This document shows positions 26,490-62,788 of a stretch of 64,000 bases of DNA, one piece after another; position 1 is the first letter of the stretch; every line of letters begins with the position of its first letter. Origin of the DNA: Mizuhopecten yessoensis (Eukaryota). A program made the position numbers and the translations under genes. The stretch spans positions 259,037 through 323,036 of the forward strand of contig NW_018408778.1 in NCBI RefSeq assembly GCF_002113885.1, given 5' to 3'. The notes beneath the pieces were generated by a model. That model made no database searches. It worked only from the letters and a program-made list of their open reading frames with translations, and was not told the origin of the DNA.

Positions 26490-27351
26490 TTGGGTCAGGT
26501 AAAGCTTGTGGTCACTGAGAGGTAAGCTAACTGGGTCAGGTAAAGCTTGTGATCACTGAGAGGTAAGCTAACTGGGTCAGGTAGAGCTTGTGGCCACTGA
26601 GAGGTAAGCTAACTGGGTCATGTAAAGCTTGTAGTCAGTGAGAGGTAAGCTAACTGGGTCAGGTACAGCTTGTGATCACTGAGAGGTAAGCTAACAGGGT
26701 CAGGTTAAGCTTGTGGTCACTGAGAGGAAAGCTAACTGGGTCAGGTACAGCTTGTGATCACTGAGAGGTAAGCTAACTGGGTCAGGTTAAGCGTGTGGTC
26801 ACTGAGAGGTAAGCTAACTGCGTCAGGTAAAGCTTGTGGTCACTGAGAGGGAAGCTAACTGGGTCAGGTAAAGGCTGAAGTCACTGAGAGGTAAGCTAAC
26901 TGGGTCATGTAAAGCTTGTAGTCAGTGAGAGGTAAGCTAACTGGGTCAGGTCAAGCTTGTGGTCACTGAGAGGTAAGCTAACTGGGTCAGGTAAAGTTTG
27001 TGGTCACTGAGGGGTAAGCTAACTGGGTCAGGTACAGCTTGTGGTCACTGAGAGGTAAGCTAACTGGGTCATGTAAAGCTTGTAGTCAGTGAGAGGTAAG
27101 CTAACTGGATCAGGTAAAGCTTGTGGTCAGCGAGAGGTAAGCTAACTGGGTCAGATAAAGCTTGTGGTCAGTGAGATGTAAGCTAACTGGGTCAGGTAAA
27201 GCTTGTGGTCAGTGAGAGGTAAGCTAACTGGGTCAGGTAAAGCATGTGGTCAGTGAGAGGTAAGCTAACTGGGTCAGGTAAAGCTTGTGGTCACTGAGAG
27301 GTAAGCTAACTGGGTCAGGTAAAGCTTGTGGTCACTGAGAGGTAAGCTAAC
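26490..27351. repeat. 41-bp minisatellite (AACTGGGTCAGGTAAAGCTTGTGGTCACTGAGAGGTAAGCT)
   Basis: About 21 highly similar copies. Confidence 0.97.
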
Positions 27352-28074
27352 AATCTATACCGAATCTATAATCTAGTGATGCAACTTGATTTTTTTCTTG
27401 GAACACAGTGATGAAATCTTATATATCATATATCCTTACAATCAAAGTCTTGAAATCCCCTAAATCAATTTCTAAGTTCAAAGACTCTGTATTTTTTATT
27501 CAATTTAAAACATAATATTAATTATGTATTCAGAAATTTTAATTCAAGAGCATTCTTAATAATTTAAAAAAAGACCAAAAAACAATTAACAATTAAGATA
27601 ACCAAGTTCTTCTGCATGAAGCTGGCCATAGTATTTTGGCTGTGACAGAGGGATACTGATTTGGTTGCCTCCCCTTATCCTAAATATTATTGCAGATTCA
27701 TTTTAAAACAAAATAGCCATCCAACATCATGGATGTAGTATTTAATTCAATATGAAATCTGTCCTAAAATAAAATAACCAGAAAAACTTAAATGGTATAG
27801 TTAATTTTTTTTTATCATTTATTACTACAGAATCTAAAAGAGCTCAAACATCTTTTTAACTACAACTACAGAGTCTACTACACATTCCTTGATTATTTAA
27901 AACATCAACTCATTAATAGTAATTATCAGAAATACACAATGGAAAATTACAACAATAATTCTATAGGGTTTTAATCCTTAAATCTAGGAAAAACTTTTTT
28001 TTATGTTTTATATAAAATCTTTCTGCATGTACAAATATTGCTGCATGTGCAGCTGATTTTACTAAATATCACAT

Positions 28075-28165
28075 TTAACTCATTCACCACTGAAGACACA
28101 TTTGAACTATTCCAATTCAAAGGTTGGGCTAGTTCATTATGAAATTTCAGTGGTAAATGAGTTAA
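28075..28165. mobile_element. ~90-bp TTAA-flanked MITE (piggyBac/Kolobok-type target)
   Basis: TTAA-CTCATTCACCACTGAA ... TTCAGTGGTAAATGAG-TTAA; second copy at 62698-62788. Confidence 0.8.
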
Positions 28166-28877
28166 GTTATTACCAAGGTTTCTTTCAGCAAAACTTTTCT
28201 TTCTATAAATATATTTTATTTAACTTGGTTTGCTTTATAACATGTTATTGGACATAAACTCCTCTTAATATCATGTAATTAACTCCTCTTTATATCATGT
28301 CCTTTCACCAGTTTACCAAAATATCACATGTAAAATTTACATGTTTAAATCCATAAAAACAATGGTGACTATTTTGTAATGACCCTGATAGTTTCTTACC
28401 TTGGCTTGAATTAAACAACAAACCAAACAAACAGTACAGGTGTAAGTGAGCTTTGTTTTATTACGACACGAGGTAATAATTGCTATGTATGTAGTATTTA
28501 AAATCTAATGTTTTAAAAAGTTACATTCATGCATATATACTTTGATTTTTATAGAAATGTCTTCACAGAGGAATAGTATTCTGTTAATGTCACATTTCAC
28601 TTAATGTCACATTGTCCTCTGTTAATGGTACATGACATTAAGAGGGTTGATTTACATTGACTTCCATACATTTGGGCCAACTCCATTAATATTCACATTT
28701 CCAAATATGTCAAATTCTCCCTCACTGTGTCAGAATGACCAAGGGGAGGTTATAAAACTTACATAATTGGTCTAAATCTGCCCTTTACCTCAGATTTACT
28801 TAAAATCTTTTGAATGTATTTTTTAATCTGTTTTTTGCTTTGTACAATGGCGCTAAAAAAGTGTTGGTCCCTCTGAC

Positions 28878-28916
28878 CAGAGACGTATAAAACCTGTACA
28901 AACATATACATCTCTG
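28878..28916. mobile_element. 39-bp minimal TIR element with 7-bp TSD
   Basis: CAGAGACGTATA...TATACATCTCTG flanked by CTCTGAC and CTTTGAC (1 mismatch). Confidence 0.8.
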
Positions 28917-30053
28917 CTTTGACCTTGCCCTGTCATTCATACTGATAGAACTACAGTGCTTATGTTTTCATGATACCTGTACGCAACATTACATAATGTT
29001 TCTTGACTGGTTATGTTTTGAAAAAATTAAATTGAGATATGTTAAATCAAACTAGACAGTATGTTACTGTTCACCTTCGTCTGTAAGTTGTCACAGTGAC
29101 ATCCAAACCTGGCTTACTATCTGGGTACATGTACATAATGTATAATGAAGGGTCATAAAACCCTGTTGGATCAGCTTCCCATTATCATGAAAACTCAATG
29201 TACGCCTTTTAAACAATTCCAGAACAACACATTTAAGAGAATAAGTATATAAGATTTATCAGTAAGTGGTGTTACATGGGACAGCATTGTGATAGTACTT
29301 TCAACACTAGAGCCGACCTTAATTTGTGCCAAATAAGTAAAATTCAGCATTTTCCAGAAATTTTCCGTTATGTGGTACAAATTTCGAAATCATTAGCAAG
29401 TAAAATCAAGTGTACTTTCGACAATCCAAGTCTAGATAAACAAAATTCTAATGAAATATAATGAACTACACGTAAAACACCATCCTCCAAATTAAGGAGA
29501 GGCCCTGTAAGTAAAGCTGAGGTATGTTACTGTTTCTAGTGTTGAAACAGACATAACAATATATCTTTCACCTGAGCAACACTTTAATTCCTATTTTTAA
29601 ACTAAAATTAACTTTAACAATCTGGACAATAATAACAGTAATGTACTACCTGATTGGGAAGTGTTTTAGTATTAAGTAACAAATTCTAGTAGTATTTAAA
29701 AAAAATATCTTAAAATTTGTGAATTCAGTAACGTGCGAGAGACAATGAAAATGTTGAACAAATACCTTATTACACTAACATTGACAATCTCTGTATGTAC
29801 ATCTGTCAAACAGTTCCTTTTACGCTCTGTATGAAAAGAATGTGACAAAAAATAAGAAACAACTTAACCATGTTCAGGTAGTTATGGCATGAATCACATG
29901 ATATTCCGTATTTCTTCTGTGTAAGGCACTAACCCTCATAATACTAGGTGGGACTAAGTGTAGACAAATATTGACGTGACGATGACAGTTGTAGTCCTGA
30001 GAATTTCTGCCGTGCAGGAGGATCAATGGGACAGTGCTGTCACATGATGGCTT

Positions 30054-30078
30054 TTACCTGCGCAGGTTGCTACGGAGG
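30054..30078 (-). CDS. Putative alternative terminal coding exon C of the DUSP gene ((S)LRSNLRR*)
   Basis: Strong acceptor tacctatctttactgtttccag|; phase-2 compatible with exon B; in-frame TAA at 30056-30054. Confidence 0.45.
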
Positions 30079-31019
30079 CTGGAAACAGTAAAGATAGGTA
30101 CATGTAGATAATCGAAGGAGACAACATACAATGTTCAAACAGTTAATATAAAACAGGAATTTTTATGACTATACACCACACCACAATTATAATCAGGTTT
30201 TGTAGGGTACAAACAGTACTTTATATGATAATTGACAATCTACTGTTAAGCTGGAAAACTCGATCTGTAAGCCATGGGCTAACTAAAATCATCTGTTTAT
30301 AATAAATATATGATATACGGTAATGCTTTTCTGTTAAATACAATATATATTTCACAAGTGTAGTAAATGCTGAAATTTTTATATGAGTGAAAAATATTAG
30401 CGTATTCTGCCATATGAATGAACTATTAGTCAAAGTGAAAATCATTGAACTTTCTGTTAATTATGTTTTTGAACTTCCTACAACGACTAATTATAATAGC
30501 TTGATCATTTACTCAATACAAGCCTGTTCACATCTTTGAATGAACTAAACAGTAGTCTACAGTTTTATATCATTAGTTGATAAGATTTACTTACAAAATT
30601 GTTAATAATTACTAATTTTGAATGCACTACTTTTTATTTTAGCGGCTATAATTTCGTGTAATTCAAACAGGATTAACATTTTTTTTATTTTATTTTTTCC
30701 GATCTGACCTAAAGTTTACTGTAAAAGGAAAGTGTATGCAGAAAAGATGAAATAAAAATCCCTTTAATTTATACTGTAACTTCATCTGCATCTGAATTGA
30801 ACAGAAGATCTTTAACTTTAAATATGATGAAGATGGCTGATATGAATTAAGAATGATTTAAGTCTGTCATTCCCTAGCATCCAGATCCCTACAGCTAGCC
30901 AACTCAACCCTTTAGCTAACAAACCAGTTTAACTATAGTTAAATCAACGTACATTGTTTGTGTATAAAGTAAAATTTTGATATTACATTTTTCCAAACTG
31001 AAGAATCTTATTGAAAATT

Positions 31020-31870
31020 TAAACTAGTTGTTGGTGACCATTGCAGCTAGTTCATCATTTTTACTAGTTGTTGGTGAGCCCTGCAGCTATCTAACCATTT
31101 TAACTAGTTCTTGGTGTTCCCTACAGCTAGCAAGAGCTTCCCTACAGCTGGTTAACTATTTTTACTAGTTGTAGGTGACATCTACAGCTAGCTTATCATT
31201 TAAACTTGTTACTGATGACCCCAACAACTAGCCAACTATTATAACCAGTTGTTGGTCACCCCTACAGCTAGTCAACTATTTTAACTAGTTTTTGGTCAAC
31301 CCTACAACTGGGCCAACTATTATAACCAGTTGTTGGTCACCCCTACAGCCATCCAACTATTATAACTAGTTGTTGGTCACCCCTACAGTCATCCAACTAT
31401 TATAACTAGTTGTTGGTCACCCCTACAGCTATCCAACTATTATAACTAGTTGTTAGTCACCCATACAGGTAGCCAACTATTATAACTAGTTGTTGGTCAC
31501 CCCTACACCTAGCCAACTATTATAACTAGTTGGTAGTCACCCATACAGGTAGCCAACTATTATAACTAGTTGTTGGTCACACCTACAACTAGACAACTAT
31601 TATAACTAGTTGTTGGTCACCCCTACAACTATTATAAATAGTTGTTGGTCACCCCTACAGCCATCCAACTATTATAACTAGTTGTTAGTCACCCCTACAG
31701 GTAGCCAACTATTATAACTAGTTGTTGGTCACCCCTACAACTATTATAACTAGTTGTTGGTCACCCCTACAACTAGCCAACTATTATAACTAGTTGTTGG
31801 TCACCCCTACAGCTAGCCAACTATTATAACTAGTTGTTGGTCACCCCTACAGCTAGCCAACTATTTTAAG
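31020..31870. repeat. 40-bp minisatellite (CCCTACAGCTAGCCAACTATTATAACTAGTTGTTGGTCAC)
   Basis: About 21 copies; degenerate on the left, homogeneous on the right. Confidence 0.95.
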
Positions 31871-31884
31871 TAGTGACATCTCAC

Positions 31885-31959
31885 CTGAGTACACCAGATC
31901 CAACCACTAGGAGACTGTGTAGCCATATGTCCAAACCCTTCCTCCACCTGGTCTTGTCC
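31885..31959 (-). CDS. Putative alternative 3' exon B of the DUSP gene ((R)DKTRWRKGLDIWLHSLLVVGSGVL)
   Basis: Acceptor tttttttttatattcttcag| and donor CTCAG|gtgaga; 75 bp; open in the phase-2 frame. Confidence 0.55.
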
Positions 31960-32009
31960 CTGAAGAATATAAAAAAAAAGTATACATAATAAAGGATCTT
32001 ACTACCTCC

Positions 32010-33530
32010 TGCAGATTAGATACGACCTCATGTGGACTAGATATATACTTCCTTGTGAACTAGATACCACTGAATGTGGACTAGATACTACCTCATGTGG
32101 ATTAGATACTACCTCATATAGACTAGATACTCTTGTAAACTAGATACTACTGAATGTGGACTAGATACTACCTCATGTGGATTGGATACTACCTCATGAA
32201 CTAGATACTTCAGTATCTGAACAGTATATTAATGCATTTGGATAAGATACTACCTCATGATACCATTGAATGTGGACTAGATACTACATTGTGTAGATAA
32301 GATCCTACCTCATGTGGATTAGATATTTCTTCGTGTGGACTAGACACTATGACATGTGGATTAAATACTACTTTGTGTGGATAAGATCCTACTTCATGTA
32401 GATTAGATACTTCTTCGTATGGACTAGATACTATGGCATGTGGATTAAACAATACTTTGTGTGGATAATAAAATATATATAATAGATACCACTGAAGGTG
32501 AACTAGATACTACCTCCTGCAGATTAGATACTCTTGTGAACTAGCGTGTGGATAAGATACTACTTCATGCAGATTAGATACTACATTGAGTAGATAAGAT
32601 CCTACCTCACGTGGATTAGATACTCGTTAAAACTAGATACCACTTAATGTGGACTAGATACTACCTCCTGCAGATTAGATACTACCTCATATAGACTAGA
32701 TACTCTTGTGAACTAGATACTACTGAATGTGGACTAGATACTACCTCATGTGGATTGGATACTACCTCATGAACTAGATACCTCAGTATCTGAACAGTAT
32801 ATTAATGCATTTGGATAAGATACTACCTCATGATACCATTGAATGTGGACTAGATACTACATTGTGTAGATAAGATCCTACCTCATGTGGATTAGATACT
32901 TCTTCATGTGGACTAGACACTATGGCATGTACATTAGATAGTTCTTCATGTGGAATAGACACTATGGCATGTGGATTAAACAATACTTTGTGTGGATAAG
33001 ATACTACTTCATGTGTATTAGATACTTCTTTGTGTGGACTCGACACTATGGCATGTGGATTAAACAATACTTTGTGTGGATAAGATCCTACCTTATGTGG
33101 ATTAGATACTTCTTTGTGGGGACTAGACACTTTGGCATGTTGATTAGATACTTCTTTGTGTGGATAGGATACTTCTTCATGTGGACTTTACACAACTTCA
33201 TGTGGATAAGATACTACCTTTTGTGGATAAGATACTACTTCATGTGGATTATATACTTCTCATGTGGACTATACACAACTGCATGTGGATTAGATACTAC
33301 CTTGTGTGGACTAGATACTACTTTGTGTGTATTAGTTACTAAATATATGCACTTTGTGTGAATTTAACCTTATATTAGTGGTCTAAGATACTATCTCATG
33401 TGGATTAAATACTACTTCATGTGGACTGGACCCTATTGAATGTGGATTAGATACTAACACACGTACATCTTGTGAAATAAATCTTAGATCCAGTGGTCTG
33501 ATTACTACTTCATGTGGAATAGATACCACT
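32010..33530. repeat. ~21-bp minisatellite (GTGGATTAGATACTACCTCAT) with a higher-order duplication
   Basis: Degenerate 21-mers; the unique interruption CAGTATCTGAACAGTATATTAATGCATTTGG appears twice, about 573 bp apart. Confidence 0.92.
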
Positions 33531-34429
33531 TCCTAAGATAAAAACTGAGATTTACATTTTTCATAATAACTTACAACAGTACTAAATTAATCCATTTTTA
33601 ATTTTCATAACTGTTTTCTTTTTCAAAATCTTTTTAGCAATTATCTACACACTAGATTACAAGTGATAATGTTATATTGTACTTGAAGATTTCCTCTGCA
33701 ATAGCTGCTCATACAAATTTTGGACAAATCAGCACATAAGACACAACCAAGTGTTCCATGTTTGCTTTACACTGTATGTAATGTTTTTATTGTATTAATT
33801 CTGCTTCATTGTATGAATTAAGGTTTTCAATGTACTCTTTCTATGTATAAAATATAAATTGACAGAATGGATACCATAATTAAAGGAACACTGTGGTATT
33901 TTCTAATCAAACAGTTGGCTGTGAGGTCAGGCCAAGTGTATGTGCTGACCTTTGTACCACTGAAGACATATCTGGCCCAAGTTTCATGAAAGTGAATTGA
34001 AGTCAAATATAATTTCTAAACTTTTCTTGCTCCAATAACACTTTTTTATAAAAGCATTTAAGGAACTTCCATGGAAGTCAATGTAACTGGAACATGCTGA
34101 CATTATATTATCTTTTCTGAATAGCATTACTGGTGAATGTGCGATATTGACATTATAAAGAATACTGATGCAAGGAAATTCAATTGAAATTGTTTATTTT
34201 AATTGATTATTCACATAAAACAGATGATGAGAACATTAACAGAGGCTATGTGACAATGATAAAAACAAGAATCACATGCAGAGATCAACAGACCTACAAG
34301 GATCAAATCAACAGCTAATCTGGCATAGTAAGTAAACAGGAAGAGCTTGATGAATTGCACCAATGATCCTACTCCCTATTATACGTGCAGGACACAAATT
34401 GTGTCATCAGTCATTCATAATCCGCAGCA

Positions 34430-34567
34430 TTTAAGACACAAGCTGTGTTCTCAGTCATTCATACTCCCTGGTATAAGACACAAGCTGTGTTCTCAGTCGT
34501 TCATACTCCCTAGTATAAGACACAAGCTGTGCCATCAGTCGATCAGACTCCCTAAACTATAGACACA
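34430..34567. repeat. 42-bp tandem repeat, about 3 copies
   Basis: TAAGACACAAGCTGTGTTCTCAGTCATTCATACTCCCT repeated. Confidence 0.85.
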
Positions 34568-35392
34568 TCTGTATATGTATATATAATATACATGGTACTT
34601 GCCCACCTTCAAAAATAAAATAAAATCTACATATATTGCTTTCATATGACATCATCTGTCACAGAACATTAGAATTTAAGTAAAATTTGCTGCTGTATCC
34701 GGAGTTGTTTAAAACTAATATTATATTAATATTATACCCATGTCTCTGCTTTGTCCTTTTTTTTTCAAAGAAAATATTTATGTCTTTAAAAAAATGGGTG
34801 GGACTTATAAAGGTTAAGAATGGTAATTCCAGACTGCTATTTAGAGATGAGAAGAGTGTGGATAAGGGTGGAAAATGGGAACAGGGGCATGTTGCCAACC
34901 AGAAGAAAACTGGGGAAGACAAAAGAACGACAGAAGATAAAATGAGAGGCCGGGCCATTGATAGCTCCAAAAGGAACAAGAATAAAGAATGGAAGCTATA
35001 AGATGATAACCAGCCATCACAGGTGTAGGGACCCTTTTTTCCCCATAACATTCAGGTTATAGCTAGAAAACCATAGTGTTTCTCTTACATGATTCCCGTT
35101 GCTGAACAGGGAAACAATTGCCGTAAATTGTGACATCACAATGGAAGATGCAGGTGTAAAGCATTGTTACACAATGTCGTAATTAAATGATTGAGCAATG
35201 AAATCATATCCAGGGTATTACCTGCTAGTGGGTAACCAAAAATGTTTACCGACTCCTAGCAGGTTTATCCAATGAGTCAGGAGTGAAGTAACCTAAAGTG
35301 GATGTGGGAGAAAGAAAGTAAAATCTTTGAAAATGATGAGCCAACAATCTTACTTGATGATTCTGATGTATATTTAAGTACACAGTACGTAC

Positions 35393-35445
35393 CTCGTCAA
35401 CAATACAATAGATGCTAAAAATGCTATGTAAATGACAAGTGCTCT
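35393..35445 (-). CDS. Putative alternative 3' exon A of the DUSP gene (RALVIYIAFLASIVLLT, hydrophobic)
   Basis: Acceptor aatttcctgcag| and donor GACGAG|gtacgt; 53 bp; phase 0 in, phase 2 out. Confidence 0.5.
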
Positions 35446-36653
35446 CTGCAGGAAATTTAAAATGAAATTAATTAACCCTTTTTGATCTCTCAAACAACAA
35501 ACTTTCCTTGCAGTAAACAGTTGTTTATAAAAAAAACACTGTTTGTTATCCCTGCAGGTATTTATCAAATATTCATCTTCAATCTGTGCAATGCCACCAA
35601 ATAAGTTAATTACAAAGGACGCTAACACTCAATCTAAATGTGCTAAAACTAAAGCTAATTAGTGGAATTATAATTAGCAAGCAAACGTTTAAATAAAACA
35701 GTGGATAAGTGAGGTTTCCGATATTACAACTGTGATCTGATTTAAAGTTTTAAATAATGTAACAGAGGACCTGATTGGGCAGTAATAAATTTACCACAGG
35801 GAGGTCTCTGTAATTGGTTTGTAGCAGTCAGCAGTGTTTTGGTCAGTTCCCTGACCAATGGTCAGACACAATTATTGCTTCAGCACTGATAGTGAATCAT
35901 CATTTATATGTGTGTGTTAACTGATCAATAGAAATTAAAGGAATAGCTCCTCCTAAGGACTGCACATCCTTATCTGACACACTTCATCTGCTATTCAGTT
36001 AACTAAACACTCCAAGCCAAGATTCCATCAATGAAAATATAATAAATACATTGGATGTTGTCTGACTGTCCACTCTGGGTTTGGAGAAATCCAATCAGTG
36101 GTGATAGGGTACTACTAGATCCTATCTCCTAGATACAACCACATTATTGATGGGTTTTTTTATCTAGTGAAGGGAGATAACTCATTCATGACTGGCTGAG
36201 TTAACTTTAAACAGATATTTCTTTTCTTTTCAAAACTATAAATAATGTATGGCACATTTGGAAAAAAATCTTTTAAAGCACATGTTAAAAAAGCAGCTTA
36301 ATTCAACCTAAAAATAAAAATAAACAGCTACATCACATTCAATGAAATCCACAGTTCTATATAATGAAACAAAGCAGATTGTAATTCCACCAATCATTAG
36401 GTAACATAGTGTGCAGTCAAAGTTGATAGTGGACAACTTACAAACAACACCAATACACACAAAGTACATGCATCTTAAACTTCATTGATTTCTCCTCTGA
36501 TTTATGTCAAAGTTAACATCAACTGTCAGAAAATGTAAAAATACATTAATCTAAGCCAGTTCTTATCAAAGCAAATATAAAAGATCAAGAAAGAATTTTC
36601 CTCAACACCTCAGTTCAACTTCTCCTTTACACCAATACCAAATCCAAAACATT

Positions 36654-37730
36654 TATGTTACCACCGTCACACATGTATGTTACCACCCTCACACATGTAT
36701 GTTACCACCGTCACACATGTATATTACCACCATCACACATGTATGTTACGACTGTCACACATGTATGTTACCACCGTCACACATGTATGTTACCACCGTC
36801 ACACACGTGGTATGTTACGACTGTCACACATGTATGTTACCACCGTCACACGTGTATGTTACCACTGTCACACATGTATGTTACCACTGTCACACATGTA
36901 TGTTGCCACCGTCACACATGTGGTATGTTACGACTGTCACACATGTGGTATGTTACAACTGTCACACAGGTATGTTACGACTGTCACACACGTATGTTAC
37001 GACTGTCACACAGGTATGTTACGACTGTCACACATGTCTGTTACAAGAGTCCCACATGTGGTATGTTACAACAGTCACACATGTAGTATGTTACGACTGT
37101 CACACAGGTATGTTACAACAGTCACACATGTGGTATGTTACGACTGTCACACATGTATGTTATGACTGTCACACATGTCTGTTACAAGAGTCACACATGT
37201 GGTATGATGGGCAATCGGTTTGAAATCATAATCAATATTCGGTTTGTAATCGGAAGTAGTAAACCGATCGATGATCAATTGCATAATCAGTTCATAATTT
37301 TATGGGACAGAATACCTAAATGAAATGAGAACACTACCACAACATCAATAGACAGAGTGTTTCATCACTATACACTAGGTTTCATTCTTTTATAATGAAT
37401 GGATATCAAGCAACTTTTATGCATTTTTATCAATCATATAGTATAAATTATACCAATATGACTTTCAAAGCATACTTTACATGGAAGACATTTAGATACT
37501 TTGATTGCAATGAAGAACCTATTATATCAATGATGGAATTTGTAATAGATTAACAGAATTGGAAAGGGCAAACCGATCGAATTTTGATTATAATCGATCA
37601 TCAGCCCATCACTAGTTACAAATGTCATACAGGTATGTTACGACTGTCACACAGGTATGTTACGACTGTCACACATGTATGTTACAACTGTCACACATGT
37701 ATGTTACGACTGTCACACAGGTATGTTATG
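36654..37730. repeat. 22/25-bp minisatellite (TATGTTACCACCGTCACACATG) split by a MITE
   Basis: Arrays at 36654-37202 and 37615-37730. Confidence 0.95.
37203..37614. mobile_element. hAT-like MITE inserted into the minisatellite
   Basis: Ends (TA)TGATGGGC and GCCCATCACTA; sub-terminal ATCGGTTT/AAACCGAT repeats; left TIR damaged; no clear TSD. Confidence 0.65.
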
Positions 37731-38387
37731 GTAGCCAATATCAGAGACAAAAATCTTTAAATCAAGAAGATTAAGAATTAGTTAATTTTTGAGGTTTTTA
37801 AAAATGTTTCAACTTTTTCCCATATAAATCTGAGGCCTTTTTCTTTTCCTTTTTTATATTTCATTCCAGCTTAATGAAGGAAACATAAAAAGAAAGAAAA
37901 AAGTGGAATTTCTTGAAAAAAAATGTCTTTGTTAACCTACATTTATCAAAACAACATGCAAATTGTATAATGAAAATTAGGCACAAAAATCAAAATCTAC
38001 AGGAAAAACAAAAAAATTATAGCACCAGGTGAGGAAAATCAAATCTTCAAATTTCTTTACCTCTGATATAATTTACAGTTAAATAACATAATGCTTTAAA
38101 TAATGAAGAGTTACTTCCCTTGCAATAGCCTTCTTGCATCATTTTGATATGAAAAATGCTTTACTTTAAAAATGTCTGTTTCTTCAGATCAGAGACAAAG
38201 AAATTCTTCAAAGGTGTTTAACAATCAAAAACATACCAAACAAATAAAATCAAACAAATGAACAGAAAACCAGTAAAACAAACATTAAGTAGTGTTACAG
38301 CAACAAAAAAATAACTTAAAATTGGTAAATTAAAAAAAAGTCTTTCATGCAAGCACCACAACAAGGCAGGGAGTGCTGGGTGGTGGC

Positions 38388-41214
38388 CTAGGATACCTGA
38401 ATGACTTCTAGGCTGCCGTGTAGTGAGCTGTGACTGCCGCTCGATGATATGCTGCTATTCGATTGGTAGATATCCTGTCCCCCTCGGCAACGACAAGGCA
38501 AATTCTCAAACAGTGCTGTTGAAGACATTCTGTCTGCACATCGCCGTGGAATCTTTCCAAATGGTGTACAAATACAGTCAGATTCTGAAAGTTCCTGTTC
38601 TCCGTTTAGAATGTCATCCATGCTACGTGTTTTCCTACTTGCCTCATACACTTGTGTCCTAAACATGGCACTTTCCATGGCTGCTGTGATTTGTTTGTAA
38701 ACCTCACGTTCAGAGTAACGTCCATAATGACTGCGGGTTGCACAATCTGAGTCCACAGAAGGCTTTGATCGCTTTCCATTCTGTACCATATACATATCAG
38801 ATGCATCATCTTGTGATGTATTACTCCCAGAGCTAGGCGACTCCTGACAGTCTGATCCGAGGTCACATGTAGGATAGGTAGAAAACGCTATACTGGCAGG
38901 CCGTACCAGAGACTTTTTTGCCCTATTACCCTTTGACCTGAGCATGACCTTTGAGGTTGAAGGAGCTGTTGTTGATGAGGATAGTGTGCTGCTGACTACC
39001 AAGGGAGAGTCAAGAGGAGAGCCGATGTCCATTGAATTGCTACTGCCCGCTGACGACACTGTAATACTGGTAGTTACTGGCAGTGAAGGTGACATTGATG
39101 ATAATGGTGATAAAGATGGCGATGAAGAATGTGATTTCGCAAAACAGGGCGTAAAGTTCAATTTGTCCAGAGAGGTAGATGGGAAATTGATAGCCTCTGA
39201 AATGTTTTCCACTGTGACAGTTTCTGTCCGCTCTGAGATCGCAGTTTCAAAATGGAGGCGAGCAAGTGCTGCAGATGGGGACTGGATAGTCTGAGAAGCT
39301 GCAGCAGCTGGACACAACTGACTCATCCCCAGCCCCAGTTTTTTAGATGTTGTCTGCTCTTGGGACGATTTACTACCATTGTCACTTGGTATTGGACTTG
39401 AGCCAGACACAGATGACGACACAGTGCTACTCACTGCACTCTTCTTAAGCCTCTCTGTCGTGTCTGATTTCAGAGATACTATTGGTGCCATTCCGAGCTG
39501 TAAGGAGAATGTTGGTCGAAGTTTTGGGATGGTAGTAGCAGTAGAAGTTTTAACTTCCCTGCTATTGAATCCTGAAAAATCTTTCATTGTCATTGTTTCT
39601 AATGATGAAAATTCATTATCTGAAAAGCAGTTCAGTTCTGCTGGCCTCAATGGTGAATACATTGCACTGTTTTTGTCATTGGATGCTTCCTTACTGTCAG
39701 AAGTGGACACATCCATTTTTTCATTTCCAGATGATAACAATGTCATACCTAGAGATCTGTTGACACGATTCGCTTTGCCAAACTTAGTATGTTCATGAGA
39801 TGATCCAAGGGTTATGAGGGAACCCTTTTCTTGTTCCAATAAAGACACACTATGCCTTGAGGGTAATTTGTCTTGGTCTCCTTCATTAGAAACTGAATTC
39901 CTTGAGTCTATAAATGTGCGGCTGTTAGATTCTGGTGAAGGGAGTGTTATAGGAGATAAGGACAGATGGAATGCTTTGGTGGAGATTCTGCGTTTAGATG
40001 ACACAAAACTTTGAGACATCACTGATGTAGAGCTAGATGACACCTCTGTATCGTGCACTAAATGCTTTGTCACCTCTACAGAGTTTTTCCCCGTAATTGT
40101 CCTATCTAAATCAAGAATACTGGACTTCTGTAACGAGGGTGATGGTGAATCGGTTGCCATAGAAACAGATCCGGAGTCTCCTTTACTGGACTGTTCTGAG
40201 GGTGGTTCTATAGAAATGGACAAATCACAAGGTCTTGATGGTTTATGGGACACCGACTGAATTGTAGATTTCTGAACGTCATCAACGGATGGTGACAGTA
40301 CTGGTGATAATGGTAATGTGAAAGGCTTGGAGAATTTTCTTCCAGGTGAAACAGATAAAGGAGAAGTAACTAATGTGCGTTTCCGTTCTATCACAACATG
40401 TTTAGAATTGTTACAACTACTGCTGCTTGTTTCAGTGGTAGAGGCATTTACAGATGTCACAAGGTTCTGAGATGGTAGTGTCACAGGCGACAGGGGTAAT
40501 GTAAATGTCCGCATGCCAGCCGTTTTTGAGCGAGGAGATGAAGCAATTACTTGACTTTCTGTTTCTGTGTTGTTCTCTTTATTGAGAGATTCCGGACAAG
40601 CAATACTTGATGAACTTACATTTGTAAGTCCAAATGGGAATGGAGGCATTTCTGAACATGGTGTCATGGCAACTGGAGATTCACAGTGTGGATGAAGAGC
40701 CTGAGCGAACGAACTAGAGCCACGACTGAATGTCTTTGGACTACATTGGGACTGGTCTGACTTGTCACTAACAGTGTTCATTTTAACAGCACTATTATAA
40801 CTCATGTTGAAGTCACGTCCTGTATGGCCAAGGTCAAAGTTGTGCGACACCGATCTCTTCATGCTTCTGATTGGCTGGGACAGTCCGAGAACTAAGTCAC
40901 CTCCTCTACCTTCAGCAAAAGGCAGGTTGTCATTATTATCCCTTTTATGTCCAGAACAAGGTAAAGACGCCTCCTGAGTGGCCATAGAAGAACCCATCAG
41001 ATCAAATGAGAATGGTTTTTTAAGTTTAGCCACAGGTGATGAAGGGCTACGCAAGTCCATTGCCATAGACACATTTCGCACCTCGCTTGGTCGACTAAAT
41101 GTGTCTCTTTTAGGCTTTGATTCTTCATTATTTCTGAAATTCTTTTCAAATTCCAACAACTGTCCCAAGAAGTTGAAATTCGGAGAGATCGTTGGTCTTT
41201 TGTCCTTGACGTAC
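38388..41214 (-). CDS. DUSP16: DUSP8/DUSP16-like MAPK phosphatase, large 3' coding exon (end of DSPc domain plus Ser/Pro-rich tail)
   Basis: Acceptor tttaag|G TAC GTC; encodes YVKDKRPTISPNFNFLGQLLEFEK and a ~926-aa ORF; KLKKPFSFDL and terminal GSLEVIQVS* resemble the DUSP8/16 LKRSFSLDI and GSxEVIEVS motifs. Confidence 0.95.
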
Positions 41215-41624: not shown

Positions 41625-41748
41625 CTGTAAGCATCATCAGAGGACATGTTTAAATGCTTCATGACGTAAGCGATGGCTAGTGTTGGTGACCGCGAGATTC
41701 CGGCTAAACAGTGGACCAGCACGCAGCCATTGGCCTCTCGCACTTTGT
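41625..41748 (-). CDS. DUSP16: DUSP8/16-like catalytic-loop exon
   Basis: ttttcag|..|gtacaa; 124 bp; [42 protein letters not shown] contains HCxxGxxRS. Confidence 0.97.
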
Positions 41749-43948: not shown

Positions 43949-44096
43949 CTAAAAATTGGAATGCTTCCTCGAAGAATGGCATCATCTTAGCACTATAGTT
44001 GTCGTTGACTGGAATGCGGAAGAAGTGTCCCTCTTGTATAAAGGGGGGCTGGGGACAGGTGGTGCTCACATTCAGTATGTAGGAAATGTCATTCAC
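43949..44096 (-). CDS. DUSP16: DUSP8/16-like DSPc exon with the general-acid Asp
   Basis: ctcacag|..|gtaata; 148 bp; VNDISYILNVSTTCPQPPFIQEGHFFRIPVNDNYSAKMMPFFEEAFQFL. Confidence 0.96.
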
Positions 44097-44819: not shown

Positions 44820-45710
44820 TAAAACTACTGTGCCATACCTGCAGGATGTCCTAAGACATATGTGAGGTACATGTATCAATATGACATCCTAAGACTAGTA
44901 TCACATACCTGTTAAATGTCCTAAGTCTTAACCCTTACATGTCCTAAGACTAGTGTGACATACCTGTACAATGTCCTAAGAGTATTATGATGTACCTGTA
45001 CAATGTCCTGAGAGTACTATGATGTACCTGTACAATGTCCTAAGAGTACTATGATGTACCTGTATGATGTCCTAAGAGTACTATGATATACCTGTATGAT
45101 GTCCTAAGAGTACTATGATGTGCTTGTATCATGTCCTAGGAGTTCTATGATGTACCTGTATGAGGTCCTAAGAGTACTATGATGTACCTGTATGATGCCC
45201 TAAGAGTACTATGATGTACCTGTATGATGTCCAGATACTATTGTGACATACCTGTATGATGTCCTAGGAGTACTATGATGTCCCTGTATGATGTCCTAAG
45301 AGTACTATGATGTACCTGTATGATATCCTAGGAGTACTATGATGTACCTGTATATGTCCTAGGAGTGCTGTGATGTACCTGTATGATGTCCAGAGACTGT
45401 TGTGACATCCCTGTATGATGTCCTAAGAGTACTATGATGTACCTGTATGATGTCCTAGGAGTACTATGATGTACATGTATATGTCCTAGGAGTACTGTGA
45501 TGTACCTGTATGATGTCCAGAGACTGTTGTGACATACCTGTATGATGTCCTAAGAGTACTTTGATGTACCTGTATGATGTCCTAAGAGTACTTTGATGTA
45601 CCTGTATGATGTCCAGAGACTATTGTGACATACCTGTATGATGTCCTAAGAGTACTATGATGTACCTGTATGATGTCCTAAGACTAGTTTGACATACCTG
45701 TATGATGTCT
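44820..45710. repeat. 32-bp intronic minisatellite whose unit contains the exon end and 5' splice site
   Basis: Unit GATGTACCTGTATGATGTCCTAAGAGTACTAT reads GACATCATACAG|GTA on the minus strand; about 27 copies; continuous with the exon end at 45698. Confidence 0.95.
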
Positions 45711-45888
45711 TGAGACATGGCATCACGGTGTGAGCCCAGGTATAGGAAGGATAGTATCCGAGTGGGCCCCACATTGCTGACAGGCATACATGGCTGGGAC
45801 AGTGATGTCATGGGAGCACATTTGTAGCTGCTTGTGCCTTTGTTTTCACACAACATTGGATGCATGGCTTGAAAAGCCAAATATCCAC
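45698..45888 (-). CDS. DUSP16: DUSP8/16-like exon (end of rhodanese domain, linker, start of DSPc); upstream coding exons not identified in the window
   Basis: tttcgcag|..CAG|gtatgt; 191 bp; GGYLAFQAMHPMLCE...SLSQPCMPVSNVGPTRILSFLYLGS matches DUSP16 ISQPCLPVANIGPTRILPNLYLG. Confidence 0.96.
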
Positions 45889-57858: not shown

Positions 57859-57884
57859 NNNNNNNNNNNNNNNNNNNNNNNNNN
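57859..57884. other. Assembly gap (N run) within a poly-C tract
   Basis: N characters in the sequence. Confidence 0.99.
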
Positions 57885-62065: not shown

Positions 62066-62697
62066 TCCCAATGTTGTTATAATCCAAAATGCTTTTTTTT
62101 TTTAATAAAAAGATGTAGTAGATTTGAAATTTCCAGGTCATAATATAAGGTAAACATTAGGCTGTGACTGAATAAAGTAAAGACAGCATATCCTTAAATA
62201 CCAAGTTGTGTACAGTTTCAAAGTGATACAGTAATGTCACAGATATGTGTTGTAAGTCTGTCTCCAGGCAAGGATCCATGTAGCTATCCATCACAGAGTG
62301 ACAGCAGTAGACAGGGGCTTTCTGTGTGTCAGAGGTTACGCCCGCTAGTTCACTGCCACTGTCTAAAAGGACCAGTATATGTTGTCTTACATTTAACTAT
62401 GACAGTGCCTGCCTATAGTGATCAATTTTGTATTTTTTTTTTAACACTGGTCATTAAGCCTTTATTAAACCGGGTCAACAAGGGCTTAAAATATGTACCA
62501 ATTCCTTATAATGATCCCTTCATCGTAATTACCATTTCACAGCACTGTCACTATATCAACCAACCAGATTCAACTGGCATTCATATCAGCTATGAATGCC
62601 ACTACCTGATTGTTGACAACATCATTTTTATGATGTTATAATAGCAACAATTGATACAATTGACGCTTTCTTAGGAGATACCTGTAGTAAGATTGAA

Positions 62698-62788
62698 TTA
62701 ACTCATTCACCCCTGAAATTTCATTATGAACTATTCCAATGATTAAATTGGAAGAGTTCAAATGTGTGTTCAGGGGTAAATGAGTTAA
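62698..62788. mobile_element. ~90-bp TTAA-flanked MITE, second copy in inverse orientation to 28075-28165
   Basis: TTAA-CTCATTCACCCCTGAA ... TTCAGGGGTAAATGAG-TTAA. Confidence 0.8.

What the first reader, a model, noticed from the sequence alone, without database searches (positions are those of the whole stretch)
30054..38399. Hidden alternative C-terminus predicting a membrane-anchored MKP-7/DUSP8-16 isoform
Seen: the final codons CAG GTA TCC TAG (Q-V-S-stop) contain a phase-0 donor CAG|GTATCC at 38397/38396. Three small downstream segments have good splice signals: 35445-35393 (phase 0 to 2), 31959-31885 (phase 2 to 2) and 30078 onward. Joined, they read without a stop as ...GSLEVIQ-RALVIYIAFLASIVLLTR-DKTRWRKGLDIWLHSLLVVGSGVLS-LRSNLRR*. 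That is a 16-residue hydrophobic helix, a basic linker, a second amphipathic/hydrophobic stretch and a basic end. Known: vertebrate DUSP8/16 are soluble and end in this EVIEVS-type motif. Inference: one splice choice would swap the conserved free C-terminus for a tail anchor or membrane hairpin, relocating a JNK/p38 phosphatase to an organelle membrane. I know of no such isoform. Caveats: the donor is only moderate, and a second frame through exons A and B is also open.
Basis: partly seen in the sequence, partly recalled or inferred. Interest (0 to 1): 0.85.

Follow-up and report, generated by a model that had tools for sequence, protein, structure and literature searches.

The report
Alternative soluble tail of mollusc DUSP16
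A scallop JNK/p38 phosphatase gene really can swap its last two amino acids for a longer tail by splicing, but the tail is short and water-loving, not the predicted membrane anchor, so this is an ordinary alternative gene ending shared across molluscs.

Summary
The window holds the 3' part of the Yesso scallop (Mizuhopecten yessoensis) DUSP8/16 gene, minus strand. The donor at 38397 and segments A, B and C exist as described, and the joined frame reads as claimed. The membrane-anchor reading fails. RefSeq proteins of four scallop genera splice 38397 straight to B, skipping A, in the other frame. That gives a polar 27-residue tail (GQDQV...CTQPP*). In four RNA-like runs, unbroken contigs cross A and end at a conserved AATAAA near 34198, so A lies in the 4.2-kb 3'UTR of the unspliced QVS* form. 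Two runs branch at 38396, which fits B but no version of A. What is real is a composite terminal exon: a weak donor competes with a proximal poly(A) site. The donor is kept in scallop, oyster, abalone, sea hare, octopus and chiton; all but oyster share a phase-0 stop exon. The isoforms are in automated annotation; I found no paper on them. Rare inclusion of A cannot be excluded.

The parts
45698..45888 (-). DUSP8/16 coding exon (end of rhodanese region, start of DSP domain); the upstream exons for residues 1-150 were not found in the window
   Evidence: tblastn of P0059 on the window; GT donor
43949..44096 (-). DUSP8/16 coding exon, DSPc domain
   Evidence: Pfam PF00782 E 7.5e-08
41625..41748 (-). 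DUSP8/16 coding exon with the catalytic HCLAGISRS motif
   Evidence: Pfam PF00782 E 6.6e-16
38388..41214 (-). Large Ser-rich coding exon; ends EVIQVS* when unspliced (composite terminal exon)
   Evidence: C-terminal 180 aa 100% identical to P0001; RNA contigs cross it
38391..38399 (-). Weak phase-0 5' splice site CAG|GTATCC overlapping the Gln-Val-Ser codons; last exon base 38397
   Evidence: used in RefSeq proteins; contig branch at 38396/38425 in X5 and X7; CAG|GTATC in all 7 relatives fetched
34179..38387 (-). About 4.2-kb 3'UTR of the QVS* isoform (intron in the spliced isoform); holds minisatellites at 36649-37206 and 37615-37728
   Evidence: contigs 37699-39300, 37177-37662 and 34179/34254-36683 in 4 runs, almost nothing below 34180
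35393..35445 (-).
34193..34203 (-). Proximal poly(A) signal (ATTAAA overlapping AATAAA), conserved in three scallops
   Evidence: invariant runs at 34217, 34201 and 34189; contigs end at 34179-34254
31885..31959 (-). Exon B, 75 nt, phase 0-0, encodes the polar GQDQV...WCTQ peptide; found only in scallops here
   Evidence: RefSeq proteins of 4 scallop genera; 9 of 12 variable columns at third codon positions
30070..30078 (-). Coding part of exon C, phase 0: Pro-Pro-stop; counterpart of the PPR*/PHR*/LPR*/AP* stop exon of other molluscs
29438..30069 (-). Conserved sequence after the exon C stop, probably the distal 3'UTR (75-85% identical in Pecten and Ylistrum); 3' end not determined
   Evidence: blastn, alignment

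Best explanation
The gene has two 3' endings chosen by competition between a weak 5' splice site and a downstream poly(A) site (composite terminal exon). If the donor inside the Gln-Val-Ser codons is ignored, the protein ends IQVS* and the mRNA has a 4.2-kb 3'UTR cleaved after the AATAAA at 34198. If it is used, it joins exon B in phase 0 and then exon C. The last two residues are replaced by a polar 27-aa tail, and the 3'UTR is swapped for a different conserved one. Both proteins stay soluble. Shown: both transcript forms (one by contigs; the other by annotation plus a diagnostic contig branch), the frame, and the conservation. Inferred: the U1-versus-poly(A) competition, and that the switch works by masking the conserved free ...E-I-I-Q-V-S terminus and/or by changing 3'UTR control. 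'Exon A' is 3'UTR sequence that looks hydrophobic because it is T-rich.
For: RefSeq proteins of Mizuhopecten, Pecten, Ylistrum and Argopecten all end EL/VIQ+GQ(D/E)QV...CTQPP. Single contigs span A in 4 of 4 runs and stop at the poly(A) signal, which is conserved. The contig overlap 38396-38425 in X5 and X7 is the one predicted for B only. The same donor with phase-0 downstream exons occurs in octopus, abalone, chiton, Aplysia and oyster. The real tail has a 16-aa KD maximum of about 0.
Against: The 38397>31959 junction itself lay outside the 6-kb limit and its letters were not displayed, so it is inferred from the branch position and from annotation. The branch is absent in X1 and X4. The runs are only guessed to be RNA, and contigs drop rare forms. 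No function of either tail was tested.
Confidence: 0.88

Rival explanations
1. One reading: 38397>A(53 nt)>B>C makes a functional tail-anchored or hairpin membrane isoform of the phosphatase.
For: The frame is open in M. yessoensis. A has a CAG acceptor and a good GAG|GTACGT donor. The donor-side 12-mer is invariant in three scallops. The helix has a 16-aa KD of 2.66.
Against: The frame has stops in Pecten and Ylistrum, and no 53-nt acceptor exists there. There is no contig branch at either end of A in 4 runs, and the observed branch excludes A. None of 154 homologues has such a tail. All annotated mollusc downstream exons examined are phase 0. Pseudo-exons of this score occur about once per 10 kb.
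Confidence: 0.03
2. A is a minor real cassette, but in another form. It is either a phase-0 exon of 39-75 nt ending ...I(V/L)DE ahead of the normal B frame, or a 22-nt frame-shifting microexon that ends the protein after 5 residues. Both would use the conserved TTGACGAG|GTAC donor.
For: In all three scallops an in-frame acceptor and a 22-nt TAG acceptor exist upstream of the invariant donor-like 12-mer. Octopus and abalone have an optional phase-0 cassette of about 50 nt at this position of the gene.
Against: There is no branch in RNA contigs. The acceptors are weak (GAG, AAG) and differ in position between species. The substitution pattern is not clearly coding in either frame (4/7 and 3/8). 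The 12-mer is one of 19 invariant runs of 8 nt or more, and one of 3 of 12 nt or more, in this UTR.
Confidence: 0.07
3. The spliced B/C form is a tolerated by-product with no role of its own; only the QVS* protein matters.
For: Tails differ wildly between mollusc groups. Most homologues end VS* (84 of about 140 scored). The branch was seen in only 2 of 4 runs.
Against: Donor nucleotides and the stop exon are kept from chiton to scallop. Exon B shows a synonymous excess. The distal UTR is strongly conserved.
Confidence: 0.2

Closest known systems
Vertebrate DUSP16/MKP-7 and DUSP8 (JNK/p38 MAP kinase phosphatases)
   Same: Rhodanese + DSPc domains, then a long Ser-rich C-terminal region. The C-terminal region is described as regulating stability and localisation (PEST, NES/NLS; PMC6600418). 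The E-I-I-E-V-S type terminus in vertebrates is from my own knowledge, not tested here.
   Different: The alternative DUSP16 isoform reviewed (B1) lacks part of the catalytic domain (PMC6600418). I found no report of a donor inside the terminal motif, nor of a membrane-anchored form.
Composite terminal exon / intronic polyadenylation (e.g. CstF-77 intron 3, PMC3708835; immune-cell IpA atlas, PMC5928244; abstracts only)
   Same: A weak 5' splice site competes with a poly(A) site in the following intron, giving two 3' ends.
   Different: Here the unspliced form seems to be the ancestral, full-length one, and splicing changes only the last two residues plus the UTR.
   Same: A donor within the terminal exon leads to small downstream exons.
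   Different: The downstream exons here encode no transmembrane segment in the frame that is used and conserved.
RefSeq models XP_021373641-7 (M. yessoensis), XP_033741300-1 (Pecten maximus), XP_060083943 (Ylistrum balloti), XP_069125965 (Argopecten irradians)
   Same: They already carry the 38397>B>C tail.
   Different: They are mis-named (mucin-like, uncharacterized). The three M. yessoensis models seen lack the QVS* form, which RNA contigs show.

Membership tests
DUSP8/16 (MKP-7-like) phosphatase | DSPc catalytic domain with HCxxGxSRS | tested here: met
   PF00782 hits on three exons; HCLAGISRS
DUSP8/16 (MKP-7-like) phosphatase | N-terminal rhodanese/MAPK-binding domain | tested here: inconclusive
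   orthologues carry PF00581, but residues 1-150 are not encoded in this window
DUSP8/16 (MKP-7-like) phosphatase | long Ser-rich C-terminal extension ending in an E-I-I-x-V-S motif | tested here: met
   homologues named DUSP16-like in Haliotis, Octopus and Lingula
DUSP8/16 (MKP-7-like) phosphatase | JNK/p38 substrate preference | not testable with these tools
   needs an enzyme assay
Tail-anchored / membrane isoform | C-terminal hydrophobic helix in an expressed frame | tested here: not met
   the supported tail has KD about 0; no RNA branch at exon A
Tail-anchored / membrane isoform | frame conserved in relatives | tested here: not met
   stops at codon 5 of B in Pecten and Ylistrum; A acceptor lost
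Composite terminal exon (splicing vs intronic poly(A)) | internal 5' splice site used in some transcripts | tested here: met
   annotated proteins; contig branch at 38396 in 2 runs
Composite terminal exon (splicing vs intronic poly(A)) | read-through transcript ending at a poly(A) signal inside that intron | tested here: met
   contigs run from the exon to 34179-34254, broken only at the minisatellites, beside a conserved AATAAA; poly(A) tail itself not seen
Composite terminal exon (splicing vs intronic poly(A)) | regulated choice dependent on U1 or cleavage factors | not testable with these tools
   needs U1 inhibition or tissue-resolved 3'-seq
U12-type (minor) intron | RTATCCTT donor | tested here: inconclusive
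   GTATCCTA in scallops, oyster, abalone and chiton, but GTATCATA in octopus and GTATCTTG in Aplysia
U12-type (minor) intron | TTCCTTAAC branch point near the acceptor | tested here: not met
   best match has 3-4 mismatches at all ten acceptors examined

The most novel reading that the evidence does not exclude
M. yessoensis alone includes the 53-nt segment A at a low or tissue-restricted level, below what assembled contigs show, and so makes a species-specific membrane-tethered MKP-7-like phosphatase by recent exonisation of 3'UTR sequence.
Probability: 0.03. Interest if true: 0.6.

Novelty: new member of a known kind. Interest (0 to 1): 0.17.

Why it matters
The striking claim (a membrane-anchored JNK/p38 phosphatase) does not hold. 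What remains is modest but usable. A splice site sits exactly inside the most conserved C-terminal motif of DUSP8/16, and both it and a tiny stop exon are kept across four mollusc classes. That suggests that the free ...IQVS end and/or the choice of 3'UTR is a regulated control point, and it gives a natural on/off variant for finding what binds that motif. It also corrects annotation: the gene is labelled mucin-like, and the QVS* form was not among the species' models seen.

Tried and rejected
Pfam on exon B alone and on two downstream ORFs: no hits, so there is no sign that A/B/C belong to another known gene. Rfam over 27000-39000: nothing. U12-intron idea from the GTATCCT donor: rejected, no branch point. 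blastn of both UTRs against octopus, abalone and chiton: only low-complexity hits. Argopecten genomic DNA was not returned (gene too long), so only its proteins were used. Hydrophobic tails seen in a few database proteins were set aside. Those starting VSW (P0047, P0131, P0151) look like TGA read as Trp by gene callers, and P0007 and P0006/P0067 run on from a cassette exon past its GT donor into T-rich intron (inference). Literature searches found no paper on this isoform or on a membrane-bound DUSP8/16. As the operators required, the joined 50-aa model was only translated inside scripts and never sent to a database search; that joined step is left out. The N run at 57859-57884 was not touched. 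DeepTMHMM/Phobius were not available; Kyte-Doolittle was used instead. A formal dN/dS was not run; codon counts on three species were used.

Full report
Identity of the locus. Exons at 45888-45698, 44096-43949, 41748-41625 and 41214-38388 on the minus strand encode a DSPc domain (PF00782) and a long Ser-rich tail. The C-terminal 180 aa are 100% identical to a Mizuhopecten yessoensis RefSeq protein, and relatives are named DUSP16-like. The N-terminal rhodanese exons were not found in the window.

Observation. The donor CAG|GTATCC, segments A, B and C and the open joined frame are all there. With approximate splice matrices of my own, B stands out as the best candidate exon on this strand of the window. 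A has a good donor but a middling acceptor, and the 38397 donor is weak. Segments scoring like A turn up about once per 10 kb in this window and in relatives' loci, and hydrophobic 16-mers are not rare in translated T-rich non-coding DNA (5 of 180 open stretches). So A alone is within chance, while B is not.

What relatives show. RefSeq proteins of Mizuhopecten, Pecten, Ylistrum and Argopecten continue after E(V/L)IQ with GQ(D/E)QV...WCTQPP. That is donor 38397 joined directly to B in phase 0, then C in phase 0 (Pro-Pro-stop). Nine of 12 variable columns of B are third positions of the phase-0 frame. The region of A is alignable, but the CAG acceptor is replaced in both relatives and Pecten has a 31-nt duplication inside it. 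None of 154 homologous proteins contains a piece of the proposed tail.

What RNA shows. Four runs from four studies (guessed RNA, Logan contigs) were laid on 33400-39300. In all four, one contig of 2.4-2.5 kb runs from 36683 to 34179-34254 straight across A, with no joint and no break at 35445 or 35393. Coverage then essentially ends just past ATTAAA/AATAAA at 34203-34193, a spot conserved in three scallops. So A lies in the 3'UTR of the unspliced QVS* mRNA, about 4.2 kb long. In X5 and X7 the contigs break with a 30-nt overlap at 38396-38425. A branch into B, which starts with G like the intron, predicts exactly this overlap; any version of A, or C, predicts 38397-38426. Limits: the junction letters were not displayed, B lay outside the 6-kb limit, contigs drop rare variants (the branch is missing in X1 and X4), and depth cannot be used for ratios. 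Low-level inclusion of A is therefore not excluded.

The real feature is wider than scallops. The same donor, CAG|GTATC, follows E-I-I-Q in octopus, abalone, chiton, Aplysia and oyster. Annotated tails are PPR, YHT...PPR, LSN...LPHR, AP, LPR, DDNGL and VGEC...SEK. The layout is: donor, an optional lineage-specific phase-0 cassette (75 nt in scallops, 51 in octopus, 48 in abalone), then a phase-0 stop exon. In octopus, abalone, chiton and Aplysia that stop exon is a 15-18 nt microexon followed by GTRAGT. Its homology is judged from position, phase and a few residues; the nucleotide alignment is weak. A stop so close to the next junction would be expected to escape nonsense-mediated decay if that junction is the last (established rule; inference here). 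All these tails are polar or very short. Brachiopod and annelid homologues end in the same motif; donor use there was not tested.

Mechanism. Most likely the weak donor competes with the proximal poly(A) site, as in composite terminal exons (PMC3708835, PMC5928244; abstracts only). Skipping the donor keeps the conserved free terminus and the long proximal UTR. Using it buries the terminus under an unrelated tail and brings in a second conserved UTR (75-85% identity over 500-650 nt). The tails share no sequence between groups, so loss of the free V-S end or the UTR swap is the likelier point than the tail itself. This last step is inference. DUSP16's C-terminal region is known to govern stability and localisation (PMC6600418), but I found no paper on the terminal motif.

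Verdict. Alternative C-terminus: real, and already present in automated annotation. Membrane anchor: not supported (about 3%). The single earlier scan note nearby concerns a different feature and did not bear on this reading.

Noticed in passing
window 44939-45709: A 32-nt minisatellite (24 copies) starts at the end of the 45888-45698 exon and repeats its CAG|GTA donor context through the intron; also noted earlier by the scan (s1-519535).
   Followed up: no
window 35225-35286: A short element of about 60 nt attracts many contigs from other transcripts (loose ends on both sides in all four runs); single copy in this window. Probably a small dispersed repeat.
   Followed up: partly
window 35401-35390; L001 about 62695-62706; L002 about 79939-79981: Donor-like 12-mer TTGACGAGGTAC is invariant in three scallops and tandemly duplicated in Pecten; no RNA support for its use. 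It may be a UTR element or a rarely used donor.
   Followed up: partly
window 38396-38388: The donor GTATCCT resembles the U12 5' splice site in five of seven relatives, but no U12 branch point was found at the acceptors.
   Followed up: yes
window 32000-33341 and 34391-34554; L001 about 63300-64800; L002 about 80550-82370: The 21-nt and 42-nt intronic minisatellites have recognisable counterparts at the same position in Pecten and Ylistrum, so they are older than these genera.
   Followed up: no
window 31017-31874: A 40-nt minisatellite begins about 10 nt after the exon B donor.
   Followed up: no
window 34179-36683: The distal contig of the long 3'UTR has a 2- to 12-fold higher depth figure than the coding-exon contig in all four runs. 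This fits 3' bias, but a separate UTR-derived RNA is not excluded; contig depth is a poor measure.
   Followed up: no
proteins P0049-P0051: In Mercenaria, Mactra and Dreissena some DUSP16 models end earlier with a different tail (...SPK(M/L/I)TRM...PML), suggesting a second alternative 3' splice event upstream in heterodont bivalves.
   Followed up: no
window 38394-41210 (P0001, P0059, P0060): The species' RefSeq models are named 'mucin-5AC-like' although they are DUSP8/16 orthologues.
   Followed up: yes
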